Assembly: GCF_963853765.1 (NCBI RefSeq)
Contig: NC_088853.1
Location: 39,060,001-39,124,000 of the forward strand
Origin: Magallana gigas
Taxonomy: Eukaryota
Direction of reading: 5' to 3'
DNA: 64,000 bases
The notes under the pieces were generated by a model, which ran no database searches, was not told where the DNA came from, and saw nothing but the letters and a program-made list of their open reading frames with translations. Shown piece by piece: positions 1,666-56,944 of the stretch. The translations under genes were made by a program, and so were the position numbers. Each line of letters begins with the position of its first letter. The first letter of the stretch is position 1.

Positions 1666-2131
1666 TACATGTATAAGGTAGTTAGTATTACGTCACTATA
1701 AAAGTATGTGTGTAATCTCCCTGTAACCCCAAATCTTACCCCAAAAGCCTCGAGCATATCACCTCATTTTAAACATGAACAAACATATCTATAAATTAAA
1801 GTTTGCAATTTTTTGAAATCAATATCTAGTTTTCTCTTTTATTGTAATTTTAATTTAAAAATTATTGATGGATTTGGTCTTTTGTTTCATTTAACATCCA
1901 TGTTCATTACAGCCATTGCAACAGTTTAATTTTGTCCACGTTCAGTTACATTAAAATCAACATTTTCTCGGTATTGCATCTTCGAAACTAACAAGGAAAA
2001 TCATAAAAAGATTTATTATTCTGAAAAAACAAAATTGTTAACATGTAAATAAAAAGCGTATAATTATACGTGATGGCAGTTTATACCACAGAGGCCATAA
2101 TTTCCAAGATACATAATAACAGTGACTATAC

Positions 2132-2356
2132 CGTGATTGTTCGTCCTGAAGTAAATAGTGATGTGATGGATACTGTGGATGCTCCTCAGGTTCACCCACC
2201 AGGTGGCGGTTGTTGATAACGATGATACAGCATATTTACCACCGTCCAAGCTCAGGTCAGATTTACGTCCGTCCACAGCATTACTGGCGTCAAATCTGTC
2301 GTTACCTGGCATGTAAGGGTACTGCTGGTATGCTGGTTTATTGCGGGCAACGTTAA
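2132..2356 (-). CDS. Host gene B exon: N-terminal half of an F-type-lectin-like (FTP) domain
   Basis: Acceptor ttgttgacag| before 2356 and donor |GTATAG at 2131; 225 nt, phase 1-1; reads NVARNKPAYQQYPY...FDASNAVDG...TWWVNLRSIHSIHHITIYFRTNNH. Confidence 0.85.
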
Positions 2357-2900: not shown

Positions 2901-2952
2901 CATAAGCCTTTGAAATCGCGAACACTACCAACAATAAAAACATGGACAACAT
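2901..2952 (-). CDS. Host gene B first coding exon (signal peptide)
   Basis: ATG at 2952 gives MLSMFLLLVVFAISKAY + G, then donor GTGAGT at 2900. It joins in frame (phase 1) to the 2356 exon as ...AY-VNVARNK. An acceptor (attacctatag|) 2 nt upstream of the ATG implies a non-coding upstream exon. Confidence 0.8.
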
Positions 2953-4043: not shown

Positions 4044-4105
4044 ACTCAGAAGAATGTACAGTGGATGATTCTGCTACCCATATAATAATAAGGGAACGTA
4101 ATATG

Positions 4106-4309
4106 TATAGTGTTTTTACACCTATATCATAAGTGGGTTGCCCCGAACTTACCGATACATAGCTGATTTGGTCTGTATTGGAATACGGCTTGTTCTCGTT
4201 TAGGCTGCAGTCCAAAGTGATCGGGGTCTTCACCATGAGCTCCCGCCAGGTGACGTCACAGCCCGTCATCATAGGTAACTCGTCCTTGGAGTAGTCGACA
4301 ACCACTACA
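4106..4309 (-). repeat. 3' LTR of element 1
   Basis: Direct repeat of 12958-13161; minus-strand ends TGTAG...CTATA; contains TGACGTCA (4251-4258) and CG|GTAAGT (4152-4147). Confidence 0.95.
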
Positions 4310-4327
4310 CTCCCCTCCGTTTTCTTC
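4310..4327 (-). other. Polypurine tract of element 1
   Basis: Minus strand GAAGAAAACGGAGGGGAG immediately before the 3' LTR. Confidence 0.85.
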
Positions 4328-4600
4328 GAAGGGACTCGGCCCACACTACCAGTAGGCCGGCTCCGTCCACTCCACTAAGCTGGACTTACAACCAACACAT
4401 CACCAGGGGGCGCATAACGCCCATCCCAATCAATACTGGGATCAACATCCCAATCTATACTGGGATCAACAGCCCTCACTTTTACGAGTTCAGAATATGG
4501 GCAGATGGGGCCATACAAGACATGATGGCCTCCGCCCAATAGAAAACGCCAACTAACCGTCCAGGAAACAGGGTCTGGGGGGACATAGGAGGGCGCGTAC

Positions 4601-5609
4601 CTACCACTCCTCCAGGATCAAGATGTGGACCCGGCGGGTTCTAGCATACCCGCGAGGATAGTCTACTGCTATGTACCCTCCTGTCGCAGTCCCAGGTGGC
4701 GGGCGGGGGAACTCCGGAGAGAACTCTACTCCCCTCGCTCTTCCTGCAACCCAGGGGTCCCAGGGCTCCAAGGCGCCCACCAGCTCATCCTCGGACGAGG
4801 TCGGGTCTGGGCCATAGTCCTCCGGCTCCTCCTCGGGCGGGGTCGCTGCTTCATCTACTTCGGTCTCCTCCCGTCTGAAGCTCTCGAGGGGTAGTGGCTT
4901 CATCGTCCTCGGACTCCTCCTGTCTGAAGCTCTCTGGAGGGGTAGTGGCGTCATCGTCCTCGGACTCCTCCAGGCAGATGCTCCCCAGAACTGGGGGATC
5001 AGGGGCATCCCAATCCTCATGGCAAGGACCCGGGGGCGGGGGTGGCAAGAGCCTAAACATCCCGTACTGCGACAATGGGTGCCCGCTGACTGTCTCGTTG
5101 CTCCACAGCTCCCGGTAGGCCCTCCTTAGGTCCGGGCCCAACCGGGAAACTAGATGTGCCTGTACCCTCCAATGTAACAGGAGAGCGGGATGTAGCCGAC
5201 CGAACAGGGCAAATCGGTGAGGGGGGTCCTCCCCCACAAACCGGCACAGTGCCTCCATGGCCCGATTCAAATCGGTGGGAACACCGGCGGCGGGCTTCTG
5301 GAACACTTCGCCTGTTGGGACGTCCCTCGCCAGGTCCTCTGGAGTGGCTCCTTCCCCCAGCAGGTGGTGAGCCATCCACATAAGCACGCGGTACCGGAGG
5401 CTGGCCCCCGCCTCAGGGGGCACAGACCTCCGGAACACTGGATGTAGGTGGGCCACTGTCACATGAGTTCTCATGGTGCGGGTCCGCACCAGGCACCCCA
5501 GGAACGGGCAAGTCGAACTTGGCCCTCTCGAACCTCTCCTCCTCGCGGCCCCCGATGGTGGGGGGGGGGGGGCTGCGGGGCCTCTTCTTCATCGTAATCA
5601 TCGTCATCT
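4601..5609 (-). CDS. Element 1 3' accessory ORF (env position): acidic/proline N-terminus, C-X4-C-X9-H-X4-H zinc-finger-like motif, helical domain, acidic 17-aa repeats; broken by two frameshifts
   Basis: Frame of ORF 4851-5489 is open from 5588 and reads PPPPPSGAARRRGSRGPSSTCPFLGCLVRTRTMRTHVTVAHL. The second 51-bp repeat unit lacks 2 nt, which shifts reading into ORF 4601-5020 (ESFRREETEVDEAATPPEEEPED...). No signal peptide or transmembrane segment is visible. Confidence 0.7.
4830..4970 (-). repeat. 51-bp coding tandem repeat (about 2.7 copies) encoding EESEDDDATTPPESFRQ-like units
   Basis: Units at 4920-4970 and 4871-4919 (49 bp, 2-nt deletion), plus a diverged third unit. Confidence 0.85.
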
Positions 5610-7432
5610 CTGTAAAATAAAAAGACCCTATTAATAATAATAGATATTCCCCCCATACACGTCGGACACACGAACTTGTCCATAGTGGTGGCGTCCTCCG
5701 GCGAGACACCCACACACAAGCCGTGGTACCAGCAGTCGCACTGGTCACACTGGACCATTAGTTTTCCGTCATCAGGACGATGACAGAGGCAATAAAGCTC
5801 GGTATCTGTGGATGTTTCTGGTGACTTTTCTGTGGTATCAGAGGATGACTGGCTGGGCCTCGGGGGTCGGTCTCCTCCTCGATAGGGTTCCTCAGGAGTC
5901 TTACCCAGCTTCCGAGGACGTCCTCTGCGGCGAGCGGGTTGAGGCCGACAGTCATCACCCTTAACTGGGCCCTCGAGTGCTCTTTTTCCCCGAGAGGTCG
6001 AACGTTGCGCCTCGGAATCTTCATCAGATCTTACATCACATGGTGAACCACTCACGAACTTCTCCCGATATCGGGCCAGCCACAAGGGAATATCCCTGTC
6101 GTTACACTTCTTAAGGCGGTCGTGGTTTGCCACCATCACAGCTGTCTTAGTCTTCACACGGTAAAGGTAAGGTGACAGCCTCTTGAGGATGATTCCTGGG
6201 CCCTTCCAGGATGGGCTCAACTTCCGGCACTTGCCCTTAACAGTCGCCGTATCTAGCAGGTATACCAAGTCACCCTCCTCAAAGGGGCGGGTGGCTGCCT
6301 TAATGTCAAAATCCCTCTTCATCCGCTCTTCCGAGGTGTTCAAGCGTCTACGGGTGGTCTCATGCGCCGACTGTATCCTCTCCTCTAGATCTGTCACATA
6401 AGTACAAACATTCACCGGATCCTCTTGAAGGGGAGGCCTGTACATTAAGCTGGCTGGTGTGTTAACTTCCCTGCCCAACATCAGTTTATTGGCGGTGAAA
6501 CCAGAGTTACGGTTCACTGCAGAGCGCAGAGCCCCGGCTATCTGTGCAAGATGCTCATCCCAACAATCTTGGGCCTTGTCAATGTAGCATCTGACAGCAT
6601 CCATAAGAGTCCGATTATAACGTTCAACCTGTCCGTTAGCCGACGAGCGATAAGGGGTGGTACGAGCCTTGTGGATCTCCAAGAGTTCACACACCGCCGT
6701 GAACAGCTTGCTCTCAAAATTACGCCCTTGGTCTGTGAAGATCTGGAATGGGCACCCAAACCTAACGAAGAACTCATTTACCGCGGCTGTAGCTGTAACC
6801 TCGGCCGTCTGTGAAGGGAGGGGAATGCATTCCACCCATTTTGTGAACTGGTCTACCATGACCAAGACATACTCATTTCCCCTCGGAGTCCGTGGAAGTG
6901 GTCCTAAGAAGTCCAGGTGCACCCTCTCCATGGGTGCCCCAGCATGGTACTTAATCATCTCCGCCCTGGCGTGGCGCTGGGGACGTTTGTTTCTACTACA
7001 AGGGCAACAAGTACTGACAAAGTTCTCAGCCTCTCTCATCATTCTGTACCAAAAGAAGTGCTCCCTCAGCCTGGCTTTAGTTCGTTCGATTCCCTGGTGT
7101 CCAGCTGCCGGCACCTCGTGGCAAAGGCGCAGTACCTCTCGTCTCAGGTCACGGGGCACAATCAAAACTCTTTTCCTCTCTCCCCCCTCCTCTATCTCTT
7201 TCCAGAGGACTTTGTCACTATCCAGATATAACATATTCCTGTTGATGTAGTAGTGTTTCACAGCCGGGCTGGTCAGAAACAATTCGCCCTCGTCTGGTCC
7301 CAGTTCTCCCTCCAACCAATCCAAGATCAAGCCTAACTCTGGGTCATTAGAGTGGCTAAGACTCATCTCCTTAAGGGTGAGGCCTACAAGTGACGTCGGG
7401 CCTTCGAGGTCCGCCGGAGAGACTCCCATCAC
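5471..7432 (-). CDS. Element 1 pol, part 2: integrase (HHCC, DDE core) with C-terminal AT-hook and PHD finger
   Basis: HEVPAAGH...CCPC; HLDFLGP, FTDQGRNFES, NGQVERYNR; RRRGRPRK; LYCLCHRPDDGKLMVQCDQCDCWYHGLCVGVSPEDATTMDKFVCPTC. This frame is open from 7576, so the shift from ORF 7429-11424 lies between ~7430 and ~7575. Confidence 0.93.
   Translation of the reverse strand: MMGVSPADLEGPTSLVGLTLKEMSLSHSNDPELGLILDWLEGELGPDEGELFLTSPAVKHYYINRNMLYLDSDKVLWKEIEEGGERKRVLIVPRDLRREVLRLCHEVPAAGHQGIERTKARLREHFFWYRMMREAENFVSTCCPCSRNKRPQRHARAEMIKYHAGAPMERVHLDFLGPLPRTPRGNEYVLVMVDQFTKWVECIPLPSQTAEVTATAAVNEFFVRFGCPFQIFTDQGRNFESKLFTAVCELLEIHKARTTPYRSSANGQVERYNRTLMDAVRCYIDKAQDCWDEHLAQIAGALRSAVNRNSGFTANKLMLGREVNTPASLMYRPPLQEDPVNVCTYVTDLEERIQSAHETTRRRLNTSEERMKRDFDIKAATRPFEEGDLVYLLDTATVKGKCRKLSPSWKGPGIILKRLSPYLYRVKTKTAVMVANHDRLKKCNDRDIPLWLARYREKFVSGSPCDVRSDEDSEAQRSTSRGKRALEGPVKGDDCRPQPARRRGRPRKLGKTPEEPYRGGDRPPRPSQSSSDTTEKSPETSTDTELYCLCHRPDDGKLMVQCDQCDCWYHGLCVGVSPEDATTMDKFVCPTCMGGISIIINRVFLFYRDDDDYDEEEAPQPPPPHHRGPRGGEVREGQVRLARSWGAWCGPAP
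5610..5640 (-). promoter_or_regulatory. Predicted 3' splice acceptor of element 1
   Basis: Minus strand ...ctattattattaatagggtctttttattttacag|AGATGAC: an AT-rich island with branch-like sequence, pyrimidine tract and CAG, inside an otherwise GC-rich element. Confidence 0.75.
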
Positions 7433-10400
7433 GCAAGCGAACTGAGGGTACCTGCTGATCCGGATATGGGTCCTACAAGGTCCATCCGGGCTACTCTCGC
7501 CCTCAGAGTCAATCTCAGGATAGGAAAACCGCCAGTCCGTCCCAGAATTCCTCCGGATACATATCCGAGGGCTATCTCACTGACCGATGGCTGGGCTTCT
7601 CCGGATGCACGGCCGTCTACTGTCCCCTCGAGCTCGTCCTCCAGCAAAGGAGAGTAAATCCAACTTCCTGGCCTAGCAAGCGGGGCTACATCGTCTACCT
7701 CATCAGTAAATACATTCCACAATTGATGGGCTCTGGTGCACTTACGACATCCACCGCAGGGCAAGTCACTAAGGTTCACAGCGAAGTCCACCCCCTGACA
7801 TCTGGAAGACATGGTTGGTCGAGAAAGCGCGTCAGCATTCACGTGACGCTTACCGGGCCGATGTTGGATGACCATATTGTACTGGCTGAGCTCCTCCAAC
7901 CAACGAGCTAGTTGATCCTGGGGGTACCTAAAGTTCAGCAACCAGATGAGACTATGGTGGTCCGTACGTACAATAAATCTCCGGCCTAGTAGATAATGGC
8001 GATACATGCGTGTGAACCGGATGACGGCCAGGAGCTCTTTCCGAGTAGTACAGTATTTTTTCTGCTCCGCGGACAAGGTGAGGCTCCCGTAGGCTATGGT
8101 TCGCTCCTGCCCCTCTTGGACTTGGCACAGCTCGGCTCCTATGGCTTCTGCAGACGCATCTGTGTCCAGCACAAACTGATAATTGGCTGTAGGCAGAGCT
8201 AGTACCGGGGGTGAAGTGAGGGCTCTCCGGAGGTTCTCAAAGGCTGTCTGCTGCTCAGGCCCCCAAACAAAGGGTTTCTTGCCAGTGATGTTATACAGCG
8301 GATGCGCCATCTGAGCAAAGCCAGCAATAAACCCTCTATGGTAATTGGCGAAGCCTAGGAACCGCTCCACCTCCTTAACATTAGTGGGAGTCTCCCAATG
8401 CTTCACGGCCTCTATGTATTCATCACCCATCTCTACTCCCGTCCCGCTGACCTGCCTTCCCAGAAACTCTACTCGGCGCCGGAACAGCTCACACTTCTTG
8501 GGCTTGAACTTCAAGTCATAATCTCGGAATCGCTTGAACACTTGTCTCAAGATAGCCAGGTGGTAATCAAAATCACTCCCCAGCACCAGGGCGTCATCCA
8601 AGAAGGCCAGTACGATACTCCAGGTCAGCCCGCGTAACACTAAATTCATTGCCCGGGAGAAGGTAGCAGGGGCATTACAGAGACCAAACCCCATTCTCCG
8701 GAACTCAAATAGGCCATACCGGGTAATGGAGGCAGTTTTTTTTCTGTCCTTGGGGCTGATCATAATTTGATGAAATGCGGAGTTAGCGTCTAGCTTCGAG
8801 AACCACACATTTCCCGAGAGGGTATCAAGGCACTCATCAATGAGGGGAAGGGGAAAAACATCCTTCCGGGTGACATTGTTCAACCGGCGGTAGCCGAGAC
8901 ACCACCTGACTTGTCCGTCCTTCTTACGGATGAGGACTGGCGCTGAAGCCCACTCGGACATGGAGGGCTGGATCACTCCAGCGTCAAGCATCTTTTTGAG
9001 GTGCGCCTCCTCTTCGCCCGCAAAGAATACAGGAGTACGCCGCATCCTCTCCTTGACTGGCGGTGCATCTGCAGTGTCAATCTCATGCTCAAGGGCAGTG
9101 AAGTTTCCAAAATCAAACTCACTCCGGGCAAACACATCTTGGAACTCAGACAGCAGGCTAGCAAGTTGGGACCGCTCCTCATCACTCAACTCCGCAGAGG
9201 ATCGTTCTAGCAGGTCCTGCAAGTGGGTGGGTACTTCCGGTGGTGTGCCCTCGGTCCCACTCTCAGCCATGTTACGCACCTCCCTCATCAAATAGGGCAC
9301 CGGCACGTATGGCTCCGCCTCGACTGCCTCACCGATAACACTGCCCTCCTCTAAGGACACATCCTTTCCAGATGCATGAACTAAGCAAGCCAGGGACGCC
9401 TCTCCCGCAGCGTGATACGTATGTGGCATGATTAAGGCATCCGACAAGTCCTCAATCCTTGGCACAACCAGGTAATCTGACAGTCTTCTCTCTAGCCTAA
9501 GAGGGCACATGACTACAGAGCCTGCAGGAACTCGAACCTTCCTCACCAAAGTCACATTGGCCTCCGTCCGAGCATTCCCCCGTCCATAGGTCATCTGAAT
9601 TGTCTCACCGCCGAGAATCAGTATCCCATGCCTCAGGTCAAGCTGAGCACCGTGGTCTCTCATGATGTCCATCCCCAGTAGCATCTGGTCCTTGAGAGGA
9701 GCAACATACAGGTCAACCTTAAGTGTGCGCTGGCCCACACGAAAATCAAATGGTCCTGCTACAAAACCCTTAAGTCTCGCTCCGTGTCCTGCCTGCAGCA
9801 AGGTAACATGCCTTTTAATAGGGGGCTTTTGTTCTAGCTGGTCATAAAACATCTTCCCTAGGACACTTACCTCTGCCCCGGTGTCCGCCACGGCCTCTAT
9901 AGATAACCCTTGGATCCTCAATGGAACCGAGTAACTGGTTTGTGGGCGTACCTGCCCCACCACCACACACAGGTCCTCTACCTCGCCGGCCGTCTCACTG
10001 GACTGGGGCATCCAGTCCTCTTCAATGTCCTCCATGACCTCAACCTCAGTCTCCCTAAACTCGGCAATCTCTACACTGAAATCCGCCACACGCTCCGGAC
10101 TCTGGTCGGTTGGAGTTGAGAATCCCCTCCCCGGAACCACAGGTTCATCATCAGAAAACAGATCGGGTGACTTGGACCGCTCAAATCTCACCTTCAGCCC
10201 ACTACGTGCCTTCCCGCTCTTCATGCAAGAGCGGGCCTCAGCTGCTTGCTTGTCACAACTTGACTTCTCCGTAGGTTGTCCCTGAACTCTATCATCTACT
10301 GGGTGCCTTCCTGCCTCCGTATTTCTATCCGGGGTCAGCATGCGCACGGCTCCTGAAGGCCGATTCTCACTGGAGGATCTATTCCTGAACCTAGGTCCTC

Positions 10401-11424
10401 CGCGGTTCCCCTCTGCTGGGTTGGCACCTCGATTGGGTGGGGGGTGTCTCTCTGCCCCACCTACCCCTCCATCTGACCTACGCCTATTATCCAAAGGGCA
10501 CTCCCGACGGAAGTGTCTTCTTTCACCGCACCTGTAGCACAAACTTTCCCTGGGACCCCCACTCTTACTCATAGGTGATGGGGTGGCCTCAAGCTTCCCT
10601 CCGGCCTCCCTCAGGGCCATCTCCAGTTGATACACCCGTCCTCTCAAGTCCTGCACCTCTTTACTCTCTGACAAGGCGGGGGTGTCTCTCTTCTCCCTCA
10701 GGGCTTCTTCTAGCTTCTCATCATTAGACTTCCTGTCTGCCTCCACTTCCTCTGACCAAGCGACCTCCTCTGTCAACTCCCTCACTGTCTTATGCCGGTG
10801 AGGCTTGCTGCGGCGCGAGTGTTGGTAATACTGCATTCTGTCCAATGCCTCCTCGACCGTCTTAGGGCTGCCATCCAGCGCATGCAGGCCAGCGTCAACA
10901 TCTTCCGCACCATAGCATAGGCGGGGGATAGCCTGGGTGTGAATGTCTGGCAACTGGGGGAAAGCTCGTGTGGCTAATGTGAGCACACGATCTGCCCACT
11001 CTCTCAGGGACTCACCGCTGTTCTGCGTTGCCGACTGGAAATTGAGTTGGTGGGTGAGATCCGGAGCCGAGGTACCAAAGCGCTTGTCAAACTTCTTGAG
11101 GATGTCCTTAAACCGTGGACGGGGACAGACTTCCAGTAGGAGAGTATAATACTCGCTGGCTGCGCCCTCCAGGAAAAAGCAGAACTGGTCATGTTGCTCG
11201 ACCTTGGTCCATTGCTGGCTGCGCGAGAGCCTCACGAACTTATGAAGGAACGCCTTCCAGCTGGATTTGCCATCATACCGCAGGTCCTTGTACTTCGGCT
11301 TGCTACGGGGCGCAGGTGGCCTGTCGTCGTGACTGCGTAATGTGCGGCGCGAGGTAGTGGTAACAGGGTGGGGCAAGGGCTGGGTAGGTAATGCAAAGGG
11401 TGGACGATGTTGCCGGGTCAGCAA
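7429..11424 (-). CDS. Element 1 gag-pro-pol, part 1: capsid-like gag, CCHC knuckle, aspartic protease, RT, RNase H
   Basis: YDGKSSWKAF (gag); CYRCGERRHFRREC; VADTGAEVS (protease); YRRLN, PLPLIDE, MGFGLCNAPATF, FLDD (RT); LDTDAS, ELLAVI, TDHHSL, NADALSR (RNase H). Confidence 0.95.
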   Translation of the reverse strand: MLTRQHRPPFALPTQPLPHPVTTTSRRTLRSHDDRPPAPRSKPKYKDLRYDGKSSWKAFLHKFVRLSRSQQWTKVEQHDQFCFFLEGAASEYYTLLLEVCPRPRFKDILKKFDKRFGTSAPDLTHQLNFQSATQNSGESLREWADRVLTLATRAFPQLPDIHTQAIPRLCYGAEDVDAGLHALDGSPKTVEEALDRMQYYQHSRRSKPHRHKTVRELTEEVAWSEEVEADRKSNDEKLEEALREKRDTPALSESKEVQDLRGRVYQLEMALREAGGKLEATPSPMSKSGGPRESLCYRCGERRHFRRECPLDNRRRSDGGVGGAERHPPPNRGANPAEGNRGGPRFRNRSSSENRPSGAVRMLTPDRNTEAGRHPVDDRVQGQPTEKSSCDKQAAEARSCMKSGKARSGLKVRFERSKSPDLFSDDEPVVPGRGFSTPTDQSPERVADFSVEIAEFRETEVEVMEDIEEDWMPQSSETAGEVEDLCVVVGQVRPQTSYSVPLRIQGLSIEAVADTGAEVSVLGKMFYDQLEQKPPIKRHVTLLQAGHGARLKGFVAGPFDFRVGQRTLKVDLYVAPLKDQMLLGMDIMRDHGAQLDLRHGILILGGETIQMTYGRGNARTEANVTLVRKVRVPAGSVVMCPLRLERRLSDYLVVPRIEDLSDALIMPHTYHAAGEASLACLVHASGKDVSLEEGSVIGEAVEAEPYVPVPYLMREVRNMAESGTEGTPPEVPTHLQDLLERSSAELSDEERSQLASLLSEFQDVFARSEFDFGNFTALEHEIDTADAPPVKERMRRTPVFFAGEEEAHLKKMLDAGVIQPSMSEWASAPVLIRKKDGQVRWCLGYRRLNNVTRKDVFPLPLIDECLDTLSGNVWFSKLDANSAFHQIMISPKDRKKTASITRYGLFEFRRMGFGLCNAPATFSRAMNLVLRGLTWSIVLAFLDDALVLGSDFDYHLAILRQVFKRFRDYDLKFKPKKCELFRRRVEFLGRQVSGTGVEMGDEYIEAVKHWETPTNVKEVERFLGFANYHRGFIAGFAQMAHPLYNITGKKPFVWGPEQQTAFENLRRALTSPPVLALPTANYQFVLDTDASAEAIGAELCQVQEGQERTIAYGSLTLSAEQKKYCTTRKELLAVIRFTRMYRHYLLGRRFIVRTDHHSLIWLLNFRYPQDQLARWLEELSQYNMVIQHRPGKRHVNADALSRPTMSSRCQGVDFAVNLSDLPCGGCRKCTRAHQLWNVFTDEVDDVAPLARPGSWIYSPLLEDELEGTVDGRASGEAQPSVSEIALGYVSGGILGRTGGFPILRLTLRARVARMDLVGPISGSAGTLSSLA

Positions 11425-12422
11425 ACTGGGCGGCCCATCGGGGGCCTGGGTTCTCCCGTAATCAGGTGAAGGGTCCGGTCCCTGGGTGGGGGGCCATTGG
11501 GTTGCTGTTGGGCATGAGCATGTATGCTAGGATTAAGAAAGTGTACCCCGGTCTCCCTGGGAGAGGACTCGTTCATTTGTGGGTAAACCTGAGCTACTCT
11601 ACCTCCCCCCTCCTGTCTAAAATAATAAGGCTGGGGCGGCACCACAGGTGCAGGGGCAGGATAACCAAGGCTGCTAGATGGAGGTACGAACAGGCCCCAG
11701 GGGGTGCCATCAGGGCTAACTACAGTTTGATAGCCCGGGAAGGGGTAGGGCGTGGTATGTGCATAGCCTGGGTCGACATGTGACTGGTGTAATTGCCCCG
11801 AGGTGGAAGTCCCCCCACTAGATGTCACTACAATCTGTCCCTGGGTCGTAGAGGTCTGCGTTGTAGAGCCCTGCAACTGCAAATCAGTGAGCTGGGCCGA
11901 ACTAGGAGCTACATAATTGTTCCCCGAAAACGGATTCGTCAGGACTGAGGAGGCCCCCAGGTGACTGGCATGCTGACCCCCCAAGGGCTGGGGTGCGGGG
12001 CCTGTGGCCCCAGCAGGAGAGGGGTGGGGCTGCTGACCAGGGGTGGGTGGGGAATCGAAGACCAGGGACTGGGGTGCCAGTACATGACTGGCTGAAGATA
12101 CCGGCTGAGGCAAAATAACAGGATCCCTGGACTCAAGTGTAGCCTTAGCACTATGGCCTGGTGGGGATTTCCCAGGGGTAGGGGCCACATAAGAACCGCG
12201 TGAGATGGGGTCCCCATATATAGCACTGGGTGGGACAAAGTCATAATCCCCCACCGGCGAACTGCATCTTATTACAGACCCCTGACTAACACACGAATGT
12301 ACTTCACTAGGGACCTGAAACTGTGCTGGCCTAATATAACTGTCACCCTGGGTACTACCAACCCCCCTCCCCTGACGGTTGGGCAACGCAGTTTCACCCC
12401 GAAGGTACCCCGTACTACTCAC
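11418..12422 (-). CDS. Element 1 Pro/Ser/Gly/Thr-rich ORF, probably the disordered N-terminal extension of gag
   Basis: 334 open codons that overlap both neighbouring ORFs in the -1 frame; no early ATG (the track start is GTG). Confidence 0.55.
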   Translation of the reverse strand: MSSTGYLRGETALPNRQGRGVGSTQGDSYIRPAQFQVPSEVHSCVSQGSVIRCSSPVGDYDFVPPSAIYGDPISRGSYVAPTPGKSPPGHSAKATLESRDPVILPQPVSSASHVLAPQSLVFDSPPTPGQQPHPSPAGATGPAPQPLGGQHASHLGASSVLTNPFSGNNYVAPSSAQLTDLQLQGSTTQTSTTQGQIVVTSSGGTSTSGQLHQSHVDPGYAHTTPYPFPGYQTVVSPDGTPWGLFVPPSSSLGYPAPAPVVPPQPYYFRQEGGGRVAQVYPQMNESSPRETGVHFLNPSIHAHAQQQPNGPPPRDRTLHLITGEPRPPMGRPVC

Positions 12423-12649
12423 CGGGGGGTGACTTCCTCGCTGTCTGAAGCAGAGTACATGTGCTCTCTCACCGATGATCTAGGAGTGTAAAGGTGCTCA
12501 TCCTCTTCATCACTTAGCCAACCATAACTATGCTTGCGAGACGAGCGCCCAATTTGAACAGAAGGTTCCCCCATGGGCGTTATGGTGTCATCGCTATCAC
12601 TTTCGCTAAGCCCTAACGCTGCAAAGGCATTCTCTAAAGAATCGTTCAT
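12423..12649 (-). CDS. Element 1 leader ORF / predicted first coding exon (MNDSLENAF...EEVTPR)
   Basis: First internal ATG I found after the leader (aaaATGa, 12649). The ORF ends at CG|GTGAGT: its TGA stop lies inside a consensus splice donor (intron start 12422, phase 2). Confidence 0.6.
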
Positions 12650-12945
12650 TTTCAAAATGGCGCACACCGGAGCACGTGGCCAAGACAGAAAAATAGTGCA
12701 AAGATAAATGCAAAATATAAAAGTATGATGCAAAAACAACGTTGCCTAAACAAATAAAAGAATCCTACTCTAAGCTAGCAATACTATCATAGAATGCTAT
12801 ATGTTCAATAAGTTTAACCACGCGGAGCCCCCAAAAATGGCGGCTACACACGTTTATTTTGAAAAATTTGACTCAAGAAGAAAAAAATTCTGACAGACTA
12901 CGGGAAAAAAAATTTCCTTTCACTAAATCGGAGTTCGGGCCTCGA

Positions 12946-12956
12946 GTTGGGCGCCA
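12946..12956 (-). other. Primer binding site of element 1 (tRNA-Lys type)
   Basis: TGGCGCCCAAC one nt after the 5' LTR; matches the first 11 nt of the tRNA-Lys(CUU)-type PBS TGGCGCCCAACGTGGGGC. Confidence 0.85.
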
Positions 12957-12957
12957 A

Positions 12958-13161
12958 TATAGTGTTTTTACACCTATATCATAAGTGGGTTGCCCCGAAC
13001 TTACCGATACATAGCTGATTTGGTCTGTATTGGAATACGGCTTGTTCTCGTTTAGGCTGCAGTCCAAAGTGATCGGGGTCTTCACCACGGGCTCCCGCCA
13101 GGTGACGTCACAGCCCGTCATCATAGGTAACTCGTCCTTGGAGTAGTCGACAACCTCTACA
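12958..13161 (-). repeat. 5' LTR of element 1
   Basis: Direct repeat of 4106-4309, followed by TSD TATG. Confidence 0.95.
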
Positions 13162-13359
13162 TATGTTTCAAATTTGGCCTCAATATATAGCCATTTAAAG
13201 AGTTTCAGATACATTTAATTGATATGTTAGTTTTTTTAAAGAGTTGACTGAATAACATATATATATATATATTTCACCTATCTGTTTGACATTTATGGTG
13301 CAAGACGTCAGAATAGACGCTCTTTGAATAATGCAATCAATATCAGTCGAATATTATTT

Positions 13360-14250
13360 TTAGGTCACCTGAGTAGAATGTAAAACCTCTTCTTATAAAC
13401 TACAAGGCTAATTGTTATCATTTTTGGTTTGAGGTATATCTATGGTAAGGGAATCTAAATTGTGAAATTCAAAAATTTACAAAAATCTTCTTCTCTACTT
13501 TCACACAAGAAGGGAAAAACTGGTTGTATGGTTATATTGTCCATGGAACTCTCTACCGAAATGATGAAATTCTTGGCCCCAGGGTCAGGAATTCTAGCTC
13601 TAGGATGAGGCCAAAATGGCCATGAAGTAGAAATATAATAGGTCTTAGAACATCTTTTCTACTCCCATATATATTTGTTGAAAACCAAATGCATGGTTAT
13701 GATGTCCATGAAACCCTCTACAAAAATGGTAAAATTCATGACCCCAGGGTCAGGGGTTCAGACTATATGGCCATATAGTAAAAATGATTATGATGTCCAT
13801 GAAGCCCTCTACCAAAATTGTGAAACTCATGACCCCTGTGCTATGGTTTCAGGCTCTAGGGTGGGGCCACTATGGTAATACGGTAAACATGTATTATATC
13901 TTAAAAACCGTCTTCTTTACTCCCAAACATGTGGGCAAAAAACTGAATACATGGTTATAATGTTCACTTACTTCCTTACCTAAATTGTGGAATTCATGAC
14001 CCCTGGATCAGGGGTTCAAGACATGAGGGGGGGGGGGGGTCAATATTGGAATATAGTGTTAATACATATAATGTTTTAAAATATTCTCTATTCTCACACA
14101 TCTGTATGAAAAACTGACTTCATAGTTATGTTTACCAGGAAGTCCTCTACTGAAATTTTGAATTTCGTGTCCCCTGGAGTATGGGTTTTGACTATAAGGC
14201 AGGGCCAAAATGGATGTATAGGTGTTCATGCAAATAATGTTTAAAAAATC
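13360..14250. mobile_element. Degenerate Helentron-like element with roughly 170-185-bp internal repeats
   Basis: Starts taggtcacctgagt; motif catgacccc(a/t)gg(g/a)tcaggggttc recurs near 13550, 13735, 13825, 13995 and 14165. Confidence 0.5.
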
Positions 14251-14817
14251 ATCTTCTCTAAAGATTTCAGGCAGAAAAGTGGTCGTCAATACTAATACAA
14301 ATTTGTCTACTCCAGAATGTTGTTTAAGAATAATTATCAATGGTACTACAATTAACATCAATATAACAATACCACTTTTGCATCAAATTCAACAAACTAC
14401 AAATCATTCAACATGAATTTACCTTGCATGCGGTATAATTAATAGATAAATGCATCATTAAGATCATATACCCGTTTATCTCAAGGATATCCAATGCATC
14501 ACTTTAAAATGTCCATCTTTTCAAAAGAAACATATACTAGTATGTGCCCTCAATAACTTTTAAGCAATAAATCTAGCTCATTGAAATAAAATTGTTACTA
14601 TATGGGTAAAAAATGCAATTATGTAAAAAAGAATGTAATGGCTAGATACTATTCATTATTATTGTTGTTGGGTTTTTTTTATTGCCATCAAATATGTTCA
14701 CAATTGTTTATAGATATGGGAAAAAATGTGGCTTAAATAGTTGAACACCTATTATGAGCAAACTGTGATACCACGTTACCAATACCAAGTATGTGCAAAT
14801 GTAAATTTTAAAAGTGT

Positions 14818-16250
14818 TTATTCTTCTACGGTGCTGTCCTCGCTGTCAGATACGTCTATTGGTTCTGGAACGTTGGCTGCGTCTTGAACATAGACCACCA
14901 AGTTCCTAACCTCAATATTCAAAGAGTCCAGTATGTGTCTGGCATACCCGAGATACCACAGGACGGACGCAACGTGAGCACACACACCGACCACTCTCGC
15001 CCTGGTGCAGTCTTACACAGACAATACCATGCCGTAACCTGAATCAAAGGGAACAGCAAACAGGCAATAGGTTTTTAAACTCTGTGTGATTCTAATTACT
15101 TTACTATCAAATAAACAGTTCACACCATACCACAACTTCGTCGTAAAATATCCACAATACATGTGCTTTTGAAGACATGTGTCTGCTCTGCATCCTAACT
15201 TTTAGAAGTTGTGGATCTTCTTTATGAACGAGGATGTCGTGGTTTCCGTCAAGGTGCTCTTGGATGAAGCACCTTGAGAGTTTAAGCTGGGGTAGGAGCC
15301 ACACGTCATCTCACGTAGCTGTTCCTCGGTCATTTTCGGGAAATCATCGATGGTTGAAGCATCTCTCCACATCGAGGATTTCCTACTGTGCAAGCTCTCT
15401 GCCTCCACTCGCTCTTTCAGCTGATTGACCTGACGACTAAGGTGCAACATTTTAGCCGCCACTGCAACATCGTCGTAATGGGCTATTTAGAAACAATCAA
15501 AATAATTTAACTGATATGTCACTTTATTACAACGGTGGAAAAGTTCATGTAAAAAAGCATAATGCATATGCGCGAAACCAGAAATTGTTCCCGGGAAGGG
15601 GGTGTACAGGGGGAGGGGGGCATACATGGCCAATTTTCCGTTACAAGTACTTTATTGTGTGAATTGAACAAGTCTGAATTTATACAAGGCAATTATAGTT
15701 ACGCGCCGCACATAATGCATATGTTATTTTAAATACCTGGTGATAGTAGACGTAAGAAATGGCGCAGATAATCTTTATGTAGTCTTCAATGTAAGGGACT
15801 GTGTTTGTTGGGAGGACTTTGTCAAGGTACTTCCACCTCTTTATTCGGGCATTCGCCGACTCCACTAGCCATCGCAACTTTAATTGAAAATATAAACAAT
15901 ATTACAATATAACTGTTTAATAATTATGGTCATACATTTTAACACTTTTAATTAAATATGTCATTCATTAACAAAAATAGCCTCATGAATTTAAGAACAA
16001 CAATCTACCAAAGCTGAATTTTGATACTAGTATAATCTAATCTTAGCAGATTTAAACATAAAAAAAACTTAAGTTACCTTTGTAACCAAACGACTAGCAT
16101 TAGCATCTTCTGTCGACAGTTGCTTATCCCCTCGTTTCATGAAACATAGCCTTTCTGATTTGATCCCCATATCCTCCAGTACACGTATCAAATACCGATA
16201 CATGTAGATGTCATCATTTCGCAAATATTTAGGGGCCCAGTATGAACAAT
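14818..16250 (-). pseudogene. Decayed intron-containing DDE_Tnp_4-family (PIF/Harbinger-ISL2EU group) transposase with C-terminal SWIM finger
   Basis: Four exon blocks: ~16250-16078 (LEDMGIK...KRGDKQLSTEDANASRLVTK), 15877-15737 (RWLVESANARIKRWKYL), 15482-15131 (FPKMTEEQLREMTCGSY...QSRH), 15038-14818 (WYCLCK..GARVVGVCAHVASVLWYLGYARH). Most boundaries are GT-AG; frameshifts are present. Confidence 0.8.
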
Positions 16251-47848: not shown

Positions 47849-48571
47849 TTATAATATGCATTATGGAATAAGGATTATTTGATTATAACGGTTATTATAA
47901 AACCATAATATATATAAATACATTTTGTTGTGTATTATGTAAGTCGTGGCTACAATCGCCAAATCACAAAATAAAAATATTACATGAATTATTCTGTTTG
48001 TCTTCATTGTCTATAACAATGTCTTCGCGTCGGTTGACAAGGGTTTTCTCGGGGTGTCAATTTCAACTGTTACCCTCGCAAACAGGCACTATTTATATAC
48101 AATATAATGGTATATACCATCATTTCAGTTATACTGATTGGCTACTTTAACCCCGCCCTAACATACATGTAACATCCATGATCATTACAGGAAGAGGATT
48201 CAGTTAAATTGGACCTAAATGAAATATTTGGAATGCTTTATTCCTGTCCTGAATCATCTTTATATTGATTTATCATCAAAAGGTTTCTTTGTGCCTAGTT
48301 TTAATAAATAAATGCACATCCTTATAAAAATTGCTAAGCATAGCATGCATTTTACAATGTGTCATTGATTGTTAGGAGGGGGGTTCGTAGAAAAAAATGG
48401 ACACTTTAAATAATTGAACATGATTTGATAGGCTCATTACTGATTTATTCAGCAGGGTATATACACTAGTTTTTTGTGTTATGTTTTGACGATAAAGGTA
48501 AATATGTGTCGTAATATAAAAAAAATATTACAACATTTATCAAAGGTTGTTGAAATTACAAAGAACACTAT

Positions 48572-48810
48572 CTAAACACCTCTACTTAACATAGGTTACT
48601 CCATACATTACTATAATAACCGTCAGAGTAGACAACTCCAGGTGGTCTCTCGTTGTAGTAGATGGCATATTGTCAGATAAATATACAGTTTGTTGTGAAG
48701 ACAGAAGGTACATGTATCATTGTGTTTATTGTGAAATAATTATCCTTGAAACACAACCTCCACTGTGATCTATCCGTGATATTGGAGACATACACGGATA
48801 ACACAAGTAA
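48572..48810 (-). pseudogene. Dead duplicate of the lectin-like exon at 49067-49327
   Basis: SVYVSNITDRSQWRLCFKDNYFT...FTTNCIFI*QYAIYYNERPPGVVYSDGYY...NLC*VEVF; two in-frame stops and no splice donor at the end. Confidence 0.8.
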
Positions 48811-49066
48811 ATTGCAAATCAAAACAACTTACTGTTATTACAACAAGGGGGGGGGGCAAACATTCAGAAGTTAAAATAGACACTTTAAATGCCTGGATAA
48901 AATTTGATAGATTTATTTGAATTAACAACACTGTAACTTTGATTAAATCCACAAGGTCTGCACACTGTTCTGTTGTTCTACGTTTTGAAAAAAAATAATG
49001 TAGACCTATTACCACATTTTAAACAATTTTGAAAGGTTATTAGAATTTAAAAAAAAAACCGCTTAC

Positions 49067-49327
49067 CATACACTTCTACTTCACAAAGGAGAATGTCAAC
49101 ATATCTATAATAATCGTCAGGGTAGACAACTCCTGGTAGTCTCTCGTTGTAGTAGATGACATATTGTCCATGAACAAAACAATTTGTTGTGAAGACAGGG
49201 GGTATTGTGTGTATTGTGAAGTTGTCGTCCTTGAAACACAACGTTCCCTGTGATCTATCCGTGGTATTGGAGACATACACAGAGAATCCAAGTAAATGCT
49301 CTGCTATGTACGACCGAAAGCTGGAAT
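49067..49327 (-). CDS. Host gene A exon: C-terminal half of the F-type-lectin-like domain
   Basis: Acceptor ttttgtacag| and donor |GTAAGC; 261 nt, phase 1-1; LLGFSVYVSNTTDRSQGTLCFKD...GQYVIYYNERL...LCEVEVYG. Confidence 0.88.
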
Positions 49328-50371
49328 CTGTACAAAACGTTATCGATTCAGTGAAAAACAAGTTTATATGATTCTTTTTGACAATATCAACTAGCACATT
49401 GCTAAATATCAACTGCACTACAGGCGCAACATTCTACACATTCTCTCACGTATCAACTAAAATAGCTAATTGTTTAACGCACACTTACATTGAATACATA
49501 TGCAAGTTTCATATATTTGTCGTTTAAAATAACAACACCACCATCATTTATTATAATATCAAATTCAATGGCGGCGGCTAAACTCTGAGAATTCCTGAGA
49601 GAAAAAAAGATACGTATTATTAACCCATTTCTACATATAAACAAAGTTATGGTACCGTTTTTTTGAAGATTTCAACTGGTATTTTTAACAACATTAGTTG
49701 TTATACCAATGTGAAGTAAAAGTACTGGACAAAGATTTAATATCAAGAGTAATATAAAATGTTAAGCAGCTATTGTATATGATTGTCGTTAGAAATAATT
49801 GTCAGATAGCGATACGATCGTGCTAACTAATTGGAATTCAGTCAGAGTGCATTGCAGAAGGGCGGCCTGAACCCTCTCTTGAAAACTAGAAAGTTTAATC
49901 CAAACAGTAAAGAACCTGAAAAGGCACCTTACACCTTCTTGTTTAACAAAATATCACTTGAACCCCAATAAAAAACCTTAAGATACATCAGTGAAGATTA
50001 TATTATTGATAACCGTGGTGGGTAGATAACATGGAACATTTCTCAAGTTAATTTAAAAATTTTAATCTCTTTACTATCTGACCCTGAAAACACTTCATAT
50101 GATTTAGAAGAGCTATACATACAAAGATTTCTTTATCGTGCTACTTCCTCCTTTAACACACTACCTTATATTGGAAATAATTGGTTTGTTTTAATAAACA
50201 TCAGGATATTTGTGCTATAGAGATCATTTTCAAGAATAACATATACTTAACCGTCGCTCATAATTCGGGAAGAAAAACAATGTTATTAACATAAGGTAAA
50301 ACTTAAATCTGACCATTCAAGTGTCATTCTAAAACACGAAAAGAAGTATACCGTGATTGTTAGAATCATAT

Positions 50372-50931
50372 TGTAACGTGTTTTACCTAATCAAAATACC
50401 GGGTTCTTTTTAAGGGATATAAATATATTAATTTTACTTCTACTCTTCCTGACTACAATGATTAAACTTGATTTACAATTGATTGGAGGCGAATTTAAAC
50501 TACTTAGTATTGTTTAACTGGGATACTTATCATCGCGTGCCTTGGTAAAGGGTTCTTAATATTACAGGAAGTCAGGCGCCTCAGTCATATAGACTTACTA
50601 CCTCCCGACAACCAATTAAGATTCCAATTCCAATTACCGCTGAGGAGTATTCCTTCCCCTAGTCTGCCTACTTACAACCTCACAAATTAATTCTATCAGG
50701 TTTCTATTACCTTCCAGGTCTTGCTGGTTCTTCTGAGAGCTGTGGGTTTCAGACCTACTCTGCCTTATCTGCTAGATGAGTCTGCTTATATACCCTTGGG
50801 AGAGTTTACTTCCGAGGGGGGACCAGGTCATTCCATTTCAATGGGTGTACTCTGTACGCGTACGGGTGTGCTTTATTACTTAAACTTCATGGGTGTGTTT
50901 CTCTGCTTGTCACTACCCCTATTCCGTTTCA
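50372..50931 (-). repeat. 3' LTR of element 2
   Basis: Direct repeat of 56958-57517. Confidence 0.95.
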
Positions 50932-50945
50932 CTACCCACGCCTCT
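50932..50945 (-). other. Polypurine tract of element 2
   Basis: Minus strand AGAGGCGTGGGTAG abutting the 3' LTR. Confidence 0.7.
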
Positions 50946-51199
50946 AACACCGTGCGTCCCGCACGCTAAATCAATGAGAATCAAATAATTTTTTTTTTTT
51001 TTTTTTTTAAATTTTACATGGTAACTAATTGTTACCATATGCATGAAACTTGACAGCCATCAAACAATTTAAAGAACATCTACATGTAAATTTACATAGT
51101 TCAAGTAACCAACTGTTACTAGGTAAAACAAAAGAATCTTCTTCTCAGCAAAACACCATTTGCATGCAAAAAGCACATTCATTAAGAATATCACAAATC

Positions 51200-51877: not shown

Positions 51878-51878
51878 T

Positions 51879-51909
51879 CTGTCCTACAAACTGAAATAAC
51901 ATAATGACA
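51879..51909 (-). promoter_or_regulatory. Predicted 3' splice acceptor(s) of element 2
   Basis: Directly after the pol TAA: tgtcattatgttatttCAG|tttgTAG|gaCAG|aATG, with AGs ending at 51891, 51884 and 51879. Confidence 0.7.
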
Positions 51910-54546: not shown

Positions 54547-54566
54547 CGTTTAGTTGTTTAAGGTAG

Positions 54567-56594: not shown

Positions 56595-56805
56595 TCTGGT
56601 ATTATATTCTAACTGGGTTACAATTTCCTATAAATGCACTTGGTTAACTTTGCACTCGGTAAACTTTGCACTTGGTAAACTTCACCGAGTAATATTCATT
56701 ACCCGGAGACTAAGCAAACCAATAACAAGCCTAACAATACACGAAGTAACGCTGTACACACGCGGCGCAACCGACCTTTGGATAACTATACACAAGCTCT
56801 AATAT

Positions 56806-56812
56806 ACTTACC
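56806..56812 (-). promoter_or_regulatory. Predicted 5' splice donor in the leader of element 2
   Basis: TTG|GTAAGT (intron start 56811), between the PBS and the gag ATG at 56594. Confidence 0.65.
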
Positions 56813-56944
56813 AAGTCACAAATACTCGGTCCACTATACCCGTCAAAAATTAATTGGTAAAATATTAACCTGGTAAAACAAATCTACATAAAACAACAAA
56901 ACCAAAATAAATCAACAATTTAATCAGTTCCTATCCCTTAACCA

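What the first reader, a model, noticed from the sequence alone, without database searches (positions are those of the whole stretch)
5657..5934. Integrase tail carries an AT-hook plus an H3K4me3-type PHD finger
After the integrase core come RRRGRPRK (AT-hook core GRP, ~5911-5934) and a complete Cys4-His-Cys3 PHD (5797-5657). The PHD keeps the Tyr (LYC), Met (LMVQC) and Trp (CWYH) positions that form the methyl-lysine cage in PHF2/PHF8, DIDO and CFP1-type fingers. By analogy with chromovirus chromodomains, this could steer integration to active promoters. Consistent with that, though only one case, this copy sits about 1.2 kb from a gene's first coding exon in AT-rich DNA.
Basis: partly seen in the sequence, partly recalled or inferred. 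Interest (0 to 1): 0.75.

Follow-up and report, generated by a model that had tools for sequence, protein, structure and literature searches.

The report
Oyster Gypsy retrotransposon integrase with PHD
A jumping gene in what is probably an oyster genome carries, fused behind its integrase, a genuine reader domain for the histone mark of active promoters; nearly every close relative with a complete integrase keeps this domain, so it is surely used, but whether it steers insertion towards promoters is still untested.

Summary
The window has a full-length Ty3/Gypsy LTR retrotransposon on the minus strand (4106-13161). Its integrase reading frame runs without a stop into RRRGRPRK (5909-5932) and a Cys4-His-Cys3 PHD finger (5657-5794).

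The PHD passes Pfam's threshold and folds confidently. Its nearest solved structures are all H3K4me3 readers: BPTF, PHF2/PHF8, CFP1/Spp1, DIDO. It keeps the Tyr, Met and Trp cage positions.

It is not a one-off. Of the 120 closest reverse-transcriptase relatives, 72 have a complete integrase and 69 of those end in this PHD, with the cage residues almost invariant. The named relatives are molluscs and a brachiopod.

The AT-hook is seen only in the close oyster copies (0 of 66 relatives).

Two points were missed. In this family the PHD is not the protein's end: an intact sister copy continues for about 330 residues. That tail is homologous to the middle domain of a third gene that ends in a TatD-type DNase. 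All five relatives examined carry this gene after pol.

Promoter targeting stays an inference. This copy lies 1154 bp upstream of a gene's start codon, but a PHD-less Gypsy in the same window lies equally close to an exon. PHD capture by transposons is already published, so this is a new variant of a known kind.

The parts
4102..4105 (.). Target-site duplication TATG (partner at 13162-13165)
   Evidence: Direct reading of both flanks
4106..4309 (-). 3' LTR, 204 bp; contains a donor-like CGGTAAGT at 4147-4154
   Evidence: blastn of the element ends: 204 bp, 3 mismatches
4310..4327 (-). Polypurine tract directly upstream of the 3' LTR
   Evidence: Direct reading
4601..5510 (-). Post-PHD tail, derived from the lineage's ORF3. 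It has a conserved, predicted-helical domain of about 155 aa (about 5058-5510, starting CPFLGC), then an acidic low-complexity stretch, then a conserved C-terminal motif ending at the stop at 4601-4603. In this copy it is split over two frames, with a break near 4871-4891.
   Evidence: Sister copy L001/P0001 is open throughout. Tail relatives come and a profile search found 206 relatives. Of 10 long hits, 8 carry TatD_DNase. hhalign to L002 ORF3 gives probability 97%.
5560..5572 (-). Poly-C run where this copy's PHD frame loses register with the tail
   Evidence: Alignment with L001, which is open here
5610..5628 (-). AT-rich pyrimidine tract ending in CAG just after the PHD. It looks like a splice acceptor, yet it is translated in this family (GGISIIINRVFLFY).
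   Evidence: The same tract plus CAG lies between the pol stop and the ORF3 ATG in L002-L005. The peptide is conserved in P0122 and P0128.
5657..5794 (-). PHD finger, Cys4-His-Cys3, with Tyr/Met/Trp methyl-lysine cage positions
5909..5932 (-). AT-hook-like RRRGRPRK in a basic linker
   Evidence: Direct reading. Also present in L001, P0126 and P0128. Absent from 66 relatives. Shuffle P = 0.006.
5471..7432 (-). Integrase ORF: H2C2 6983-7159, rve core 6644-6937, SH3/GPY-F-like 6107-6274, then linker, AT-hook and PHD
7516..7537 (-). Zone of the frame break between RNase H and integrase in this copy
   Evidence: Three-frame translation compared with P0125, which is continuous here
7429..11424 (-). 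gag-PR-RT-RNase H ORF, 1331 aa: capsid 10963-11184, CCHC 10495-10539, PR 9637-9927, RT 8452-8931, RNase H 7879-8265
12940..12956 (-). Primer-binding site TGGCGCCCAAC..., which resembles the tRNA-Lys type (assignment from memory)
   Evidence: Direct reading
12958..13161 (-). 5' LTR, 204 bp; donor-like CGGTAAGT at 12999-13006
2901..2952 (-). Neighbouring host gene: first coding exon (signal peptide), GT donor at 2899-2900; next exon starts at 2356
   Evidence: Direct reading; the frames agree across the splice; weak F5_F8_type_C_2 match

Best explanation
The region is the C-terminal extension of the integrase of a Ty3/Gypsy LTR retrotransposon, sitting in what is probably an oyster (Magallana/Crassostrea) genome.

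Shown:
- The PHD finger is intact and belongs to the H3K4me3-reading subclass.
- It is an inherited, strongly conserved module at the C-terminus of Pol in a large Gypsy lineage. The only named relatives are molluscs and a brachiopod.
- Members of this lineage also carry a third gene ending in a TatD-type DNase.

Inferred mechanism:
- After reverse transcription the integrase-DNA complex is tethered by its own PHD finger to nucleosomes carrying H3K4me3.
- New copies therefore land preferentially in open chromatin beside active transcription start sites.
- This is the mirror image of chromoviruses, whose integrase chromodomain reads H3K9 methylation.
- It is also a built-in version of the tethering that MLV and HIV obtain through the host readers BET and LEDGF.

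In the oyster family alone, a lengthened basic linker with one AT-hook probably adds non-specific minor-groove affinity for the AT-rich host DNA (30% GC). In that family a TatD-less remnant of the third gene has also become fused in frame behind the PHD.

The copy in the window is young (3 mismatches in the 204-bp LTR pair) but has three frame breaks.
For: Element anatomy: LTRs, TSD, PBS, PPT and the order PR-RT-RH-IN.

PHD identity:
- Pfam E 6e-9.
- The best PDB sequence matches for the window PHD, and the top 22 for the family profile, are H3K4me3 (or H3K4me2/3) readers. The window PHD gives BPTF 5.8e-16, Spp1, PHF2, PHF8, DIDO1 and CFP1. The family profile gives PHF2 and DmCfp1 at 4.4e-22 and BPTF at 3e-21.
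- AF2 core pLDDT above 90. Foldseek top hits are H3K4me3-bound PHDs at rmsd 0.8-1.4 A.

Conservation:
- The 120 closest RT relatives are mostly 62-71% identical. 72 have a complete integrase and 69 of those end in the PHD.
- Among the 66 relative PHDs whose motif could be parsed, W is present in 66/66 and M in 65/66, with Y 58 and F 7 at the first position; the zinc ligands and the W are invariant in the 67-sequence alignment (those 66 plus the window PHD).
- The PHD lies a median of 5.5 residues from the Pol C-terminus.
- Very young copies keep an intact Pol-PHD: the LTR pairs of L004 and L005 are 100% identical.

Position: C-terminal to the integrase SH3/GPY-F region. That is where chromodomains and other targeting modules sit (established knowledge: Gao et al. 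2008, cited in PMC6673714).

This copy: 1154 bp upstream of a start codon, same strand.
Against: - No binding or insertion-site data exist here.
- One insertion says little. A PHD-less Gypsy in the same window is equally close to an exon.
- The element's other flank is transposon debris: a short repeat array and a Harbinger remnant.
- Other retroelement genes lie within 10 kb of the young relatives in L004 and L006.
- The window PHD, like 32 of 66 relatives, has Asp at the fourth BPTF cage position, so affinity or methyl-state preference may differ.
- Grau-Bove et al. suggest, to explain why Bromo-transposon fusions are so rare, that targeting insertions to active chromatin such as promoters and enhancers may be harmful.
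- The AT-hook has no profile support and no conservation beyond close copies.
Confidence: 0.5

Rival explanations
1. The PHD does read H3K4me3 or a similar mark, but not to choose integration sites. It could hold Pol or integrase on active chromatin for another purpose. Examples are nuclear retention of the pre-integration complex, keeping the element's own promoter in an active state or shielding it from silencing, or working together with the lineage's ORF3 TatD-type nuclease.
For: - The same conservation and reader-type evidence applies. None of it speaks to what the binding is used for.
- In all five relatives examined the PHD co-occurs with an ORF3 ending in TatD_DNase. This suggests a shared, unexplained biology.
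- The literature proposes chromatin remodelling or evasion roles for transposon PHDs without proof.
Against: - The domain is covalently attached to the integrase C-terminus, the classical place for targeting modules.
- No catalytic or effector domain in Pol would act on chromatin once bound.
- The oyster family has lost the TatD part yet keeps the PHD.
Confidence: 0.25
2. The PHD binds something other than H3K4me3: unmodified H3, another methyl-lysine, or a non-histone peptide such as a host factor. It would then act as an adaptor, as some PHF2-type and Pygo-type fingers do.
For: - The fourth cage position is Asp in the window and in 32 of 66 relatives.
- PDB neighbours include PHF2 bound to a VRK1 peptide, and EBS/SHL bound to H3K27me3.
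- Sequence similarity cannot fix ligand specificity.
Against: - Tyr, Met and Trp at the cage positions are nearly invariant.
- Every one of the closest solved relatives has H3K4me2/3 as a documented ligand.
- As far as I recall, CFP1-type and DIDO-type fingers without the fourth aromatic residue still bind H3K4me3. This is from memory and was not tested here.
Confidence: 0.18
3. The PHD is a meaningless passenger: a recent chance capture of a host exon in this copy, a decaying relic, or an artefact of reading an open frame.
For: - This copy is broken in three places.
- An AT-rich, intron-like stretch follows the PHD.
Against: - It is present in 69 of 72 relatives with a complete integrase, which share mostly 62-71% RT identity, with all ligands invariant.
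- It is present in copies with identical LTR pairs.
- The AT-rich stretch is conserved as protein in a family that is 73% identical.
Confidence: 0.02

Closest known systems
Chromoviruses (Ty3/Gypsy elements with an integrase C-terminal chromodomain, e.g. MAGGY, Tf1; Gao et al. 2008 as cited in PMC6673714)
   Same: A histone-mark reader domain fused to the C-terminus of a Gypsy integrase. The proposed role is tethering of integration.
   Different: The predicted mark is H3K4me3 (active promoters), not H3K9me (heterochromatin). The host range seen so far is molluscs and a brachiopod.
[quoted passage not shown]
   Same: Capture of a PHD finger by a mobile element, with a suspected role in chromatin recognition.
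   Different: - In Gypsy-7a_cRei the PHD lies between RNase H and integrase. Here it follows the integrase at the end of Pol.
- Here the PHD is of the PHF2/BPTF/CFP1 type. No Pygopus entry appears among the PDB matches.
- Here it is combined with an ORF3 ending in a TatD DNase.
Host H3K4me3-reading PHD fingers: BPTF, PHF2/PHF8/KDM7, CFP1/Spp1, DIDO1, Pps
   Same: - 44-47% identity to the BPTF and PHF2 fingers (34-47% across this group).
- The same zinc-ligand spacing.
- The same Tyr/Met/Trp cage positions.
- The same fold at about 1 A rmsd.
   Different: The domain is attached to a retroelement integrase rather than a remodeller, demethylase or COMPASS subunit. In the window copy the fourth BPTF cage residue is Asp.
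Retroviral tethering through host readers (MLV integrase-BET, HIV integrase-LEDGF/p75; reviewed in PMC4176367, listed and not read; the comparison is from general knowledge)
   Same: The integrase C-terminal region decides which chromatin receives the insertion. MLV likewise favours promoters and enhancers.
   Different: Those integrases bind a host protein that reads the mark.
CopiaMBD elements of arthropods (PMC6673714)
   Same: A lineage-restricted capture of a host epigenetic reader by an LTR retrotransposon. That case was tested by binding assays, which makes it a model for the experiments needed here.
   Different: Copia rather than Gypsy.

Membership tests
Ty3/Gypsy (Metaviridae) LTR retrotransposon | Two LTRs in direct orientation flanked by a short target-site duplication | tested here: met
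   204-bp LTRs with 3 mismatches; TATG duplication at 4102-4105 and 13162-13165
Ty3/Gypsy (Metaviridae) LTR retrotransposon | Pol domain order PR-RT-RNase H-IN, with a PBS after the 5' LTR and a PPT before the 3' LTR | tested here: met
   Pfam hits in that order; PBS 12940-12956 and PPT 4310-4327
PHD finger (PF00628) | Cys4-His-Cys3 ligands with canonical spacing, scoring above the Pfam gathering threshold | tested here: met
   36.2 bits against 24. All eight ligands are invariant in the 67-sequence family alignment.
PHD finger (PF00628) | PHD fold | tested here: met
   AF2 core pLDDT above 90. Foldseek probability 1.00 to many PHD structures, rmsd about 1 A.
H3K4me3-reading PHD subclass | Methyl-lysine cage residues at the positions of BPTF Y10, Y23 and W32 | tested here: met
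   Y, M and W align to these positions. In 66 relatives: Y/F 65, M 65, W 66. The Y17 position is Asp in the window.
H3K4me3-reading PHD subclass | Nearest characterised relatives are H3K4me3 readers | tested here: met
   BPTF, PHF2, PHF8, KDM7, CFP1/Spp1, DIDO1, Pps, EBS, TAF3, ING
H3K4me3-reading PHD subclass | Preferential binding of H3K4me3 peptide or nucleosome | not testable with these tools
   Needs a binding assay
AT-hook | Arg-Gly-Arg-Pro core flanked by basic residues | tested here: met
   RRRGRPRK at aa 501-508, read directly. Shuffle P = 0.006 in the linker.
AT-hook | Recognised by a curated profile, and conserved among relatives | tested here: not met
   No Pfam AT_hook hit even at E up to 10 (the model is very short, so this is weak). 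0 of 66 lineage relatives have a GRP core within 150 aa upstream of the PHD.
Chromovirus | Chromodomain C-terminal to the integrase | tested here: not met
   No Chromo family hit in the integrase ORF at E up to 0.1
Promoter-targeting retroelement (works like Tf1, MLV) | Insertions enriched near transcription start sites | not testable with these tools
   Only one copy with flanks in an identifiable gene context: 1154 bp upstream of an ATG. A PHD-less control in the window is similarly placed.

The most novel reading that the evidence does not exclude
This copy represents an undescribed, retrovirus-like Gypsy lineage, so far seen in molluscs and a brachiopod.
- Its integrase carries its own H3K4me3 reader and so targets active promoters directly.
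- That would be the active-chromatin counterpart of chromoviruses in animals.
- It also encodes a third gene with a TatD-type DNase, expressed from a spliced subgenomic RNA that runs from a donor in the LTR to an acceptor right after the PHD.
Probability: 0.35. Interest if true: 0.75.

Novelty: new variant of a known kind. Interest (0 to 1): 0.55.

Why it matters
Where a retroelement lands decides how much harm it does and how it rewires gene regulation. Chromoviruses are the textbook case of an integrase reading a histone mark directly, and they read a silent mark.

A prolific animal lineage whose integrase carries a conserved reader of the active-promoter mark would offer three things:
- A natural test of whether direct reading of H3K4me3 can aim integration at promoters.
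- An explanation for promoter-proximal insertions in mollusc genomes.
- A compact reader-integrase fusion to study.

The concept of PHD capture by transposons is already in the literature, so the value lies in this particular well-conserved and still active lineage, and in its unexplained TatD-nuclease gene.

Tried and rejected
1. Intron idea. The AT-rich stretch after the PHD (5610-5650) looks like a small intron. Every GT...CAG choice I tried removes the last zinc ligand or runs into a stop. The stretch is also conserved as peptide in P0122 and P0128. I rejected it as an intron of the pol frame. It matches the acceptor-like tract that precedes ORF3 in relatives.

2. First regex screen for PHDs in relatives found nothing because of my own pattern. 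I replaced it with phmmer.

3. The word search on the window's tail found only one protein, because the window's frame is broken after the PHD. Repeating it with the intact sister protein worked.

4. AlphaFold of the post-PHD tail gave pLDDT 41, which is unusable, so no fold search was made. Pfam finds nothing in the tail.

5. phmmer of a relative's ORF3 (L003) against PDB gave no hit.

6. The Pfam AT_hook model gave no hit on the linker.

7. Organism names for the relatives: cluster look-ups and contig look-ups returned only sample codes. The host range therefore rests on a few named proteins: Gigantopelta, Pinctada, Lingula and Magallana.

8. An insertion-site test on relatives was abandoned. 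The flanks carry no usable gene annotation.

9. A PHD tree against host PHDs was not built, because no host PHD sequences were available by reference.

10. No contig that I would take for human was met.
Full report
WHAT IS THERE

The window is AT-rich (about 30% GC) except for a 9-kb block of 53-58% GC. That block is a full-length Ty3/Gypsy LTR retrotransposon on the minus strand, 4106-13161.
- It has 204-bp LTRs that differ at 3 positions.
- A 4-bp target-site duplication (TATG) flanks it.
- A primer-binding site starts one base after the 5' LTR and a polypurine tract abuts the 3' LTR.
- One ORF (7429..11424) holds the capsid, a CCHC knuckle, protease, reverse transcriptase and RNase H.
- A second ORF in another frame (5471..7432) holds the integrase H2C2, the rve core and an SH3/GPY-F-like region.

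THE OBSERVATION

In the integrase frame, with no stop in between, come two motifs:
- RRRGRPRK at aa 501-508, nt 5909-5932.
- A Cys4-His-Cys3 PHD finger at aa 547-592, nt 5657-5794.

The PHD is beyond doubt.
- Pfam PF00628 scores 36.2 bits against a cut-off of 24.
- phmmer against PDB gives BPTF at 5.8e-16, followed by Spp1, PHF2, PHF8, DIDO1, CFP1, Pps, EBS, TAF3 and the ING proteins.
- An AlphaFold model built on a 67-sequence family alignment has a core pLDDT above 90.
- That model superposes on H3K4me3-bound BPTF, Pps, DIDO, PHF2 and Spp1 at 0.8-1.4 A.

In the BPTF alignment, whose numbering runs 4-57 of chain 2fui_A, the window's Tyr, Met and Trp fall on Y10, Y23 and W32. The Y17 position is Asp.

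The AT-hook is a literal match to the core. It is unlikely by composition alone (0.6% of shuffles), but no profile supports it.

IS IT ONLY THIS COPY?

No. A search with the RT/RNase H part returned thousands of relatives. The best 120 are mostly 62-71% identical. The named ones come from Gigantopelta, Pinctada and Lingula. Some come from bacterial 'MAG' bins of Sedimenticola and Candidatus Thiodiazotropha, which I take to be host DNA contamination.
- 72 of the 120 have a complete integrase, and 69 of those end in a PHD. The other three are cut short, frameshifted or repeat-expanded.
- In 66 parsed fingers the first cage residue is Y 58 and F 7, the Met is 65 of 66 and the Trp is 66 of 66. All zinc ligands are invariant, while overall identity to the window PHD is only 36-55%.
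- The family profile hits PHF2 and fly Cfp1 at 4.4e-22 and BPTF at 3e-21. No Pygopus finger appears in the lists.
- Copies with 100% identical LTR pairs (L004, L005) carry an intact Pol-PHD.

The domain is therefore under strong purifying selection in elements that are active now.

In these relatives the PHD lies a median of 5.5 residues from the Pol C-terminus, and a median of 19 residues behind the integrase.

WHAT IS SPECIAL IN THE WINDOW'S FAMILY

1. The linker from integrase to PHD is 98 residues and contains the AT-hook. None of 66 relatives has a GRP core there. The motif is seen only in close copies: L001, P0126 from Magallana gigas, and P0128. That it is used is therefore unproven.

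2. The PHD is not the end of the protein. A sister copy about 97% identical in DNA (L001, from a public read-set assembly) is open from the AT-hook through the PHD and on for about 330 residues to a stop equivalent to window 4601. The window copy loses this frame in the poly-C run 5560-5572 and regains it near 4871-4891, so the middle of the tail sits in another frame. A third break separates RNase H from integrase near 7516-7537, where the related P0125 is continuous. I describe these places only and did not read them through with real letters.

3. The tail has no Pfam match. Its AlphaFold model was unusable (pLDDT 41). It is conserved in other oyster sequences at 47-73% identity.

4. A profile of the tail's 155-residue domain, searched against 1.84 billion representatives, found 206 relatives. 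In 8 of 10 long ones tested, the domain sits upstream of a TatD_DNase domain.

THE LINEAGE'S THIRD GENE

- All five relatives whose loci I examined have, after Pol-PHD, an ORF3 of 581-1126 residues ending in TatD_DNase. Flanking LTR pairs that enclose ORF3 were mapped for three of them (L002, L004, L005/L006).
- The middle of L002's ORF3 aligns with the window family's tail (hhalign probability 97%).
- The oyster family therefore carries a TatD-less remnant of ORF3. In the more distant P0123 it is a separate 347-residue ORF. In the window's family it is fused in frame to the PHD.
- The AT-rich stretch right after the PHD corresponds to a pyrimidine tract plus CAG that lies between the pol stop and the ORF3 start in L002-L005.
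- A consensus AG|GTRAGT donor lies about 20-50 nt from the end of the 5' LTR in the window, L002, L004 and L005.
- Together these suggest a spliced subgenomic RNA for ORF3, as for retroviral env. This is an inference with no RNA data behind it.

HOW IT MOST LIKELY WORKS

What is shown:
- The domain is a reader of the H3K4me3 type.
- It is covalently attached to the integrase C-terminus.
- It is conserved across the lineage.

What is inferred, by analogy:
- The analogy is with chromodomain integrases, and with MLV and HIV, which reach chromatin through host readers.
- The PHD would tether the integration complex to H3K4me3 nucleosomes, so insertions would favour active promoters.
- I put this at about 0.5.

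The window gives one data point.
- The element's 3' LTR ends 1154 bp upstream of the ATG of a same-strand gene.
- That gene's signal-peptide exon (2901-2952) splices in frame to an F5/8-type-C-like exon.

This is weak evidence.
- By my rough estimate, about 6% of such a genome lies that close upstream of a start codon.
- The other flank is transposon debris.
- A PHD-less Gypsy at 50367-57252 lies about 950 bp from another coding exon.

Rivals are a chromatin-binding role unrelated to site choice (0.25) and a different ligand (0.18). A meaningless passenger is excluded by the conservation.

WHAT IS KNOWN

PHD fingers in mobile elements have been reported in:
- CR1 elements, REM1 and Gypsy-7a_cRei of Chlamydomonas (there between RNase H and integrase), Penelope-like Chlamys, Rehavkus and Ginger1.
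- A survey of 172 eukaryotic genomes, which found that PHD and Chromo are the readers most often fused to transposon domains. This included PYGO-like PHDs in cnidarian retrotransposons.

That survey also suggests, to explain the rarity of Bromo-transposon fusions, that targeting insertions to active chromatin may be detrimental. A thriving H3K4me3-reader lineage is therefore worth testing.

Seven full-text searches and a term search inside a 2026 survey of metazoan Gypsy elements found no description of two things:
- A Gypsy lineage with a PHF2/BPTF/CFP1-type PHD at the end of Pol.
- TatD in any LTR retrotransposon.

The library lacks Repbase Reports and most subscription journals, so absence is not proof.

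VERDICT

Novelty: a new variant of a known kind. Interest 0.55.

The alignment tool prints a consensus line of its own, which I did not use.

Noticed in passing
L002:14763-17351; L003:14459-16519; L004:14506-16251; L005:14208-17588; L006:5402-8782: Relatives of the window's element carry a third ORF of 581-1126 aa after Pol-PHD; in L002, L004 and L005/L006 it lies between mapped LTR pairs. It ends in a TatD-type DNase domain. I found no paper linking TatD to LTR retrotransposons.
   Followed up: partly
window 12999-13006 and 5610-5628; L002:6040; L004:7771; L005:7259: A consensus splice donor sits near the end of the 5' LTR. A pyrimidine tract plus CAG sits just before ORF3 (in the window, just after the PHD). 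This suggests a spliced subgenomic RNA like retroviral env. There are no RNA data.
   Followed up: partly
window 50367-57252 (minus strand); extra ORF at 51200-51877: A second, unrelated Gypsy element with 300-bp LTRs (97% identical) and no PHD. After its integrase it has a separate 225-aa ORF with C2H2-like zinc-finger motifs (weak Pfam hits only).
   Followed up: no
window 13528-14199 and 14800-16250: Next to the 5' LTR lie five copies of a 78-nt repeat, spaced mostly about 165-170 nt apart (one gap 91 nt). Beyond them is a remnant of a Harbinger/PIF transposase (weak DDE_Tnp_4 hit; a SWIM-like CxH motif by eye).
   Followed up: no
window 2130-2356, 2901-2952, 48560-48812, 49047-49418: Exons of secreted proteins with an F5/8-type-C or fucolectin-like domain lie at both ends of the window. 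The exon near 49 kb is tandemly duplicated (77-85% identity).
   Followed up: partly
P0126 (UniProt A0A8W8MEI4, Magallana gigas): The public gene model of a near-identical copy jumps from the middle of the PHD (…WYHGL) straight to the acidic stretch, cutting out the last three zinc ligands. This is probably a gene-prediction artefact in a transposon.
   Followed up: no
P0032, P0050, P0104, P0116: Pol proteins of this animal retroelement lineage are deposited as proteins of bacterial metagenome bins (Sedimenticola, Candidatus Thiodiazotropha). This probably reflects host DNA contamination in those bins.
   Followed up: no
window 11425-12939: About 1.5 kb lies between the primer-binding site and the start of the long gag-pol ORF. 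It has no similarity to the N-terminal halves of relatives' Gag proteins. It contains short ORFs in several frames and an AT-rich patch at 12750-12950.
   Followed up: no
P0003 (Gigantopelta aegis): In this closest named relative, the region after the integrase holds about 300 residues of a tandem PSPQGE-type repeat, and phmmer finds no PHD in the protein.
   Followed up: no
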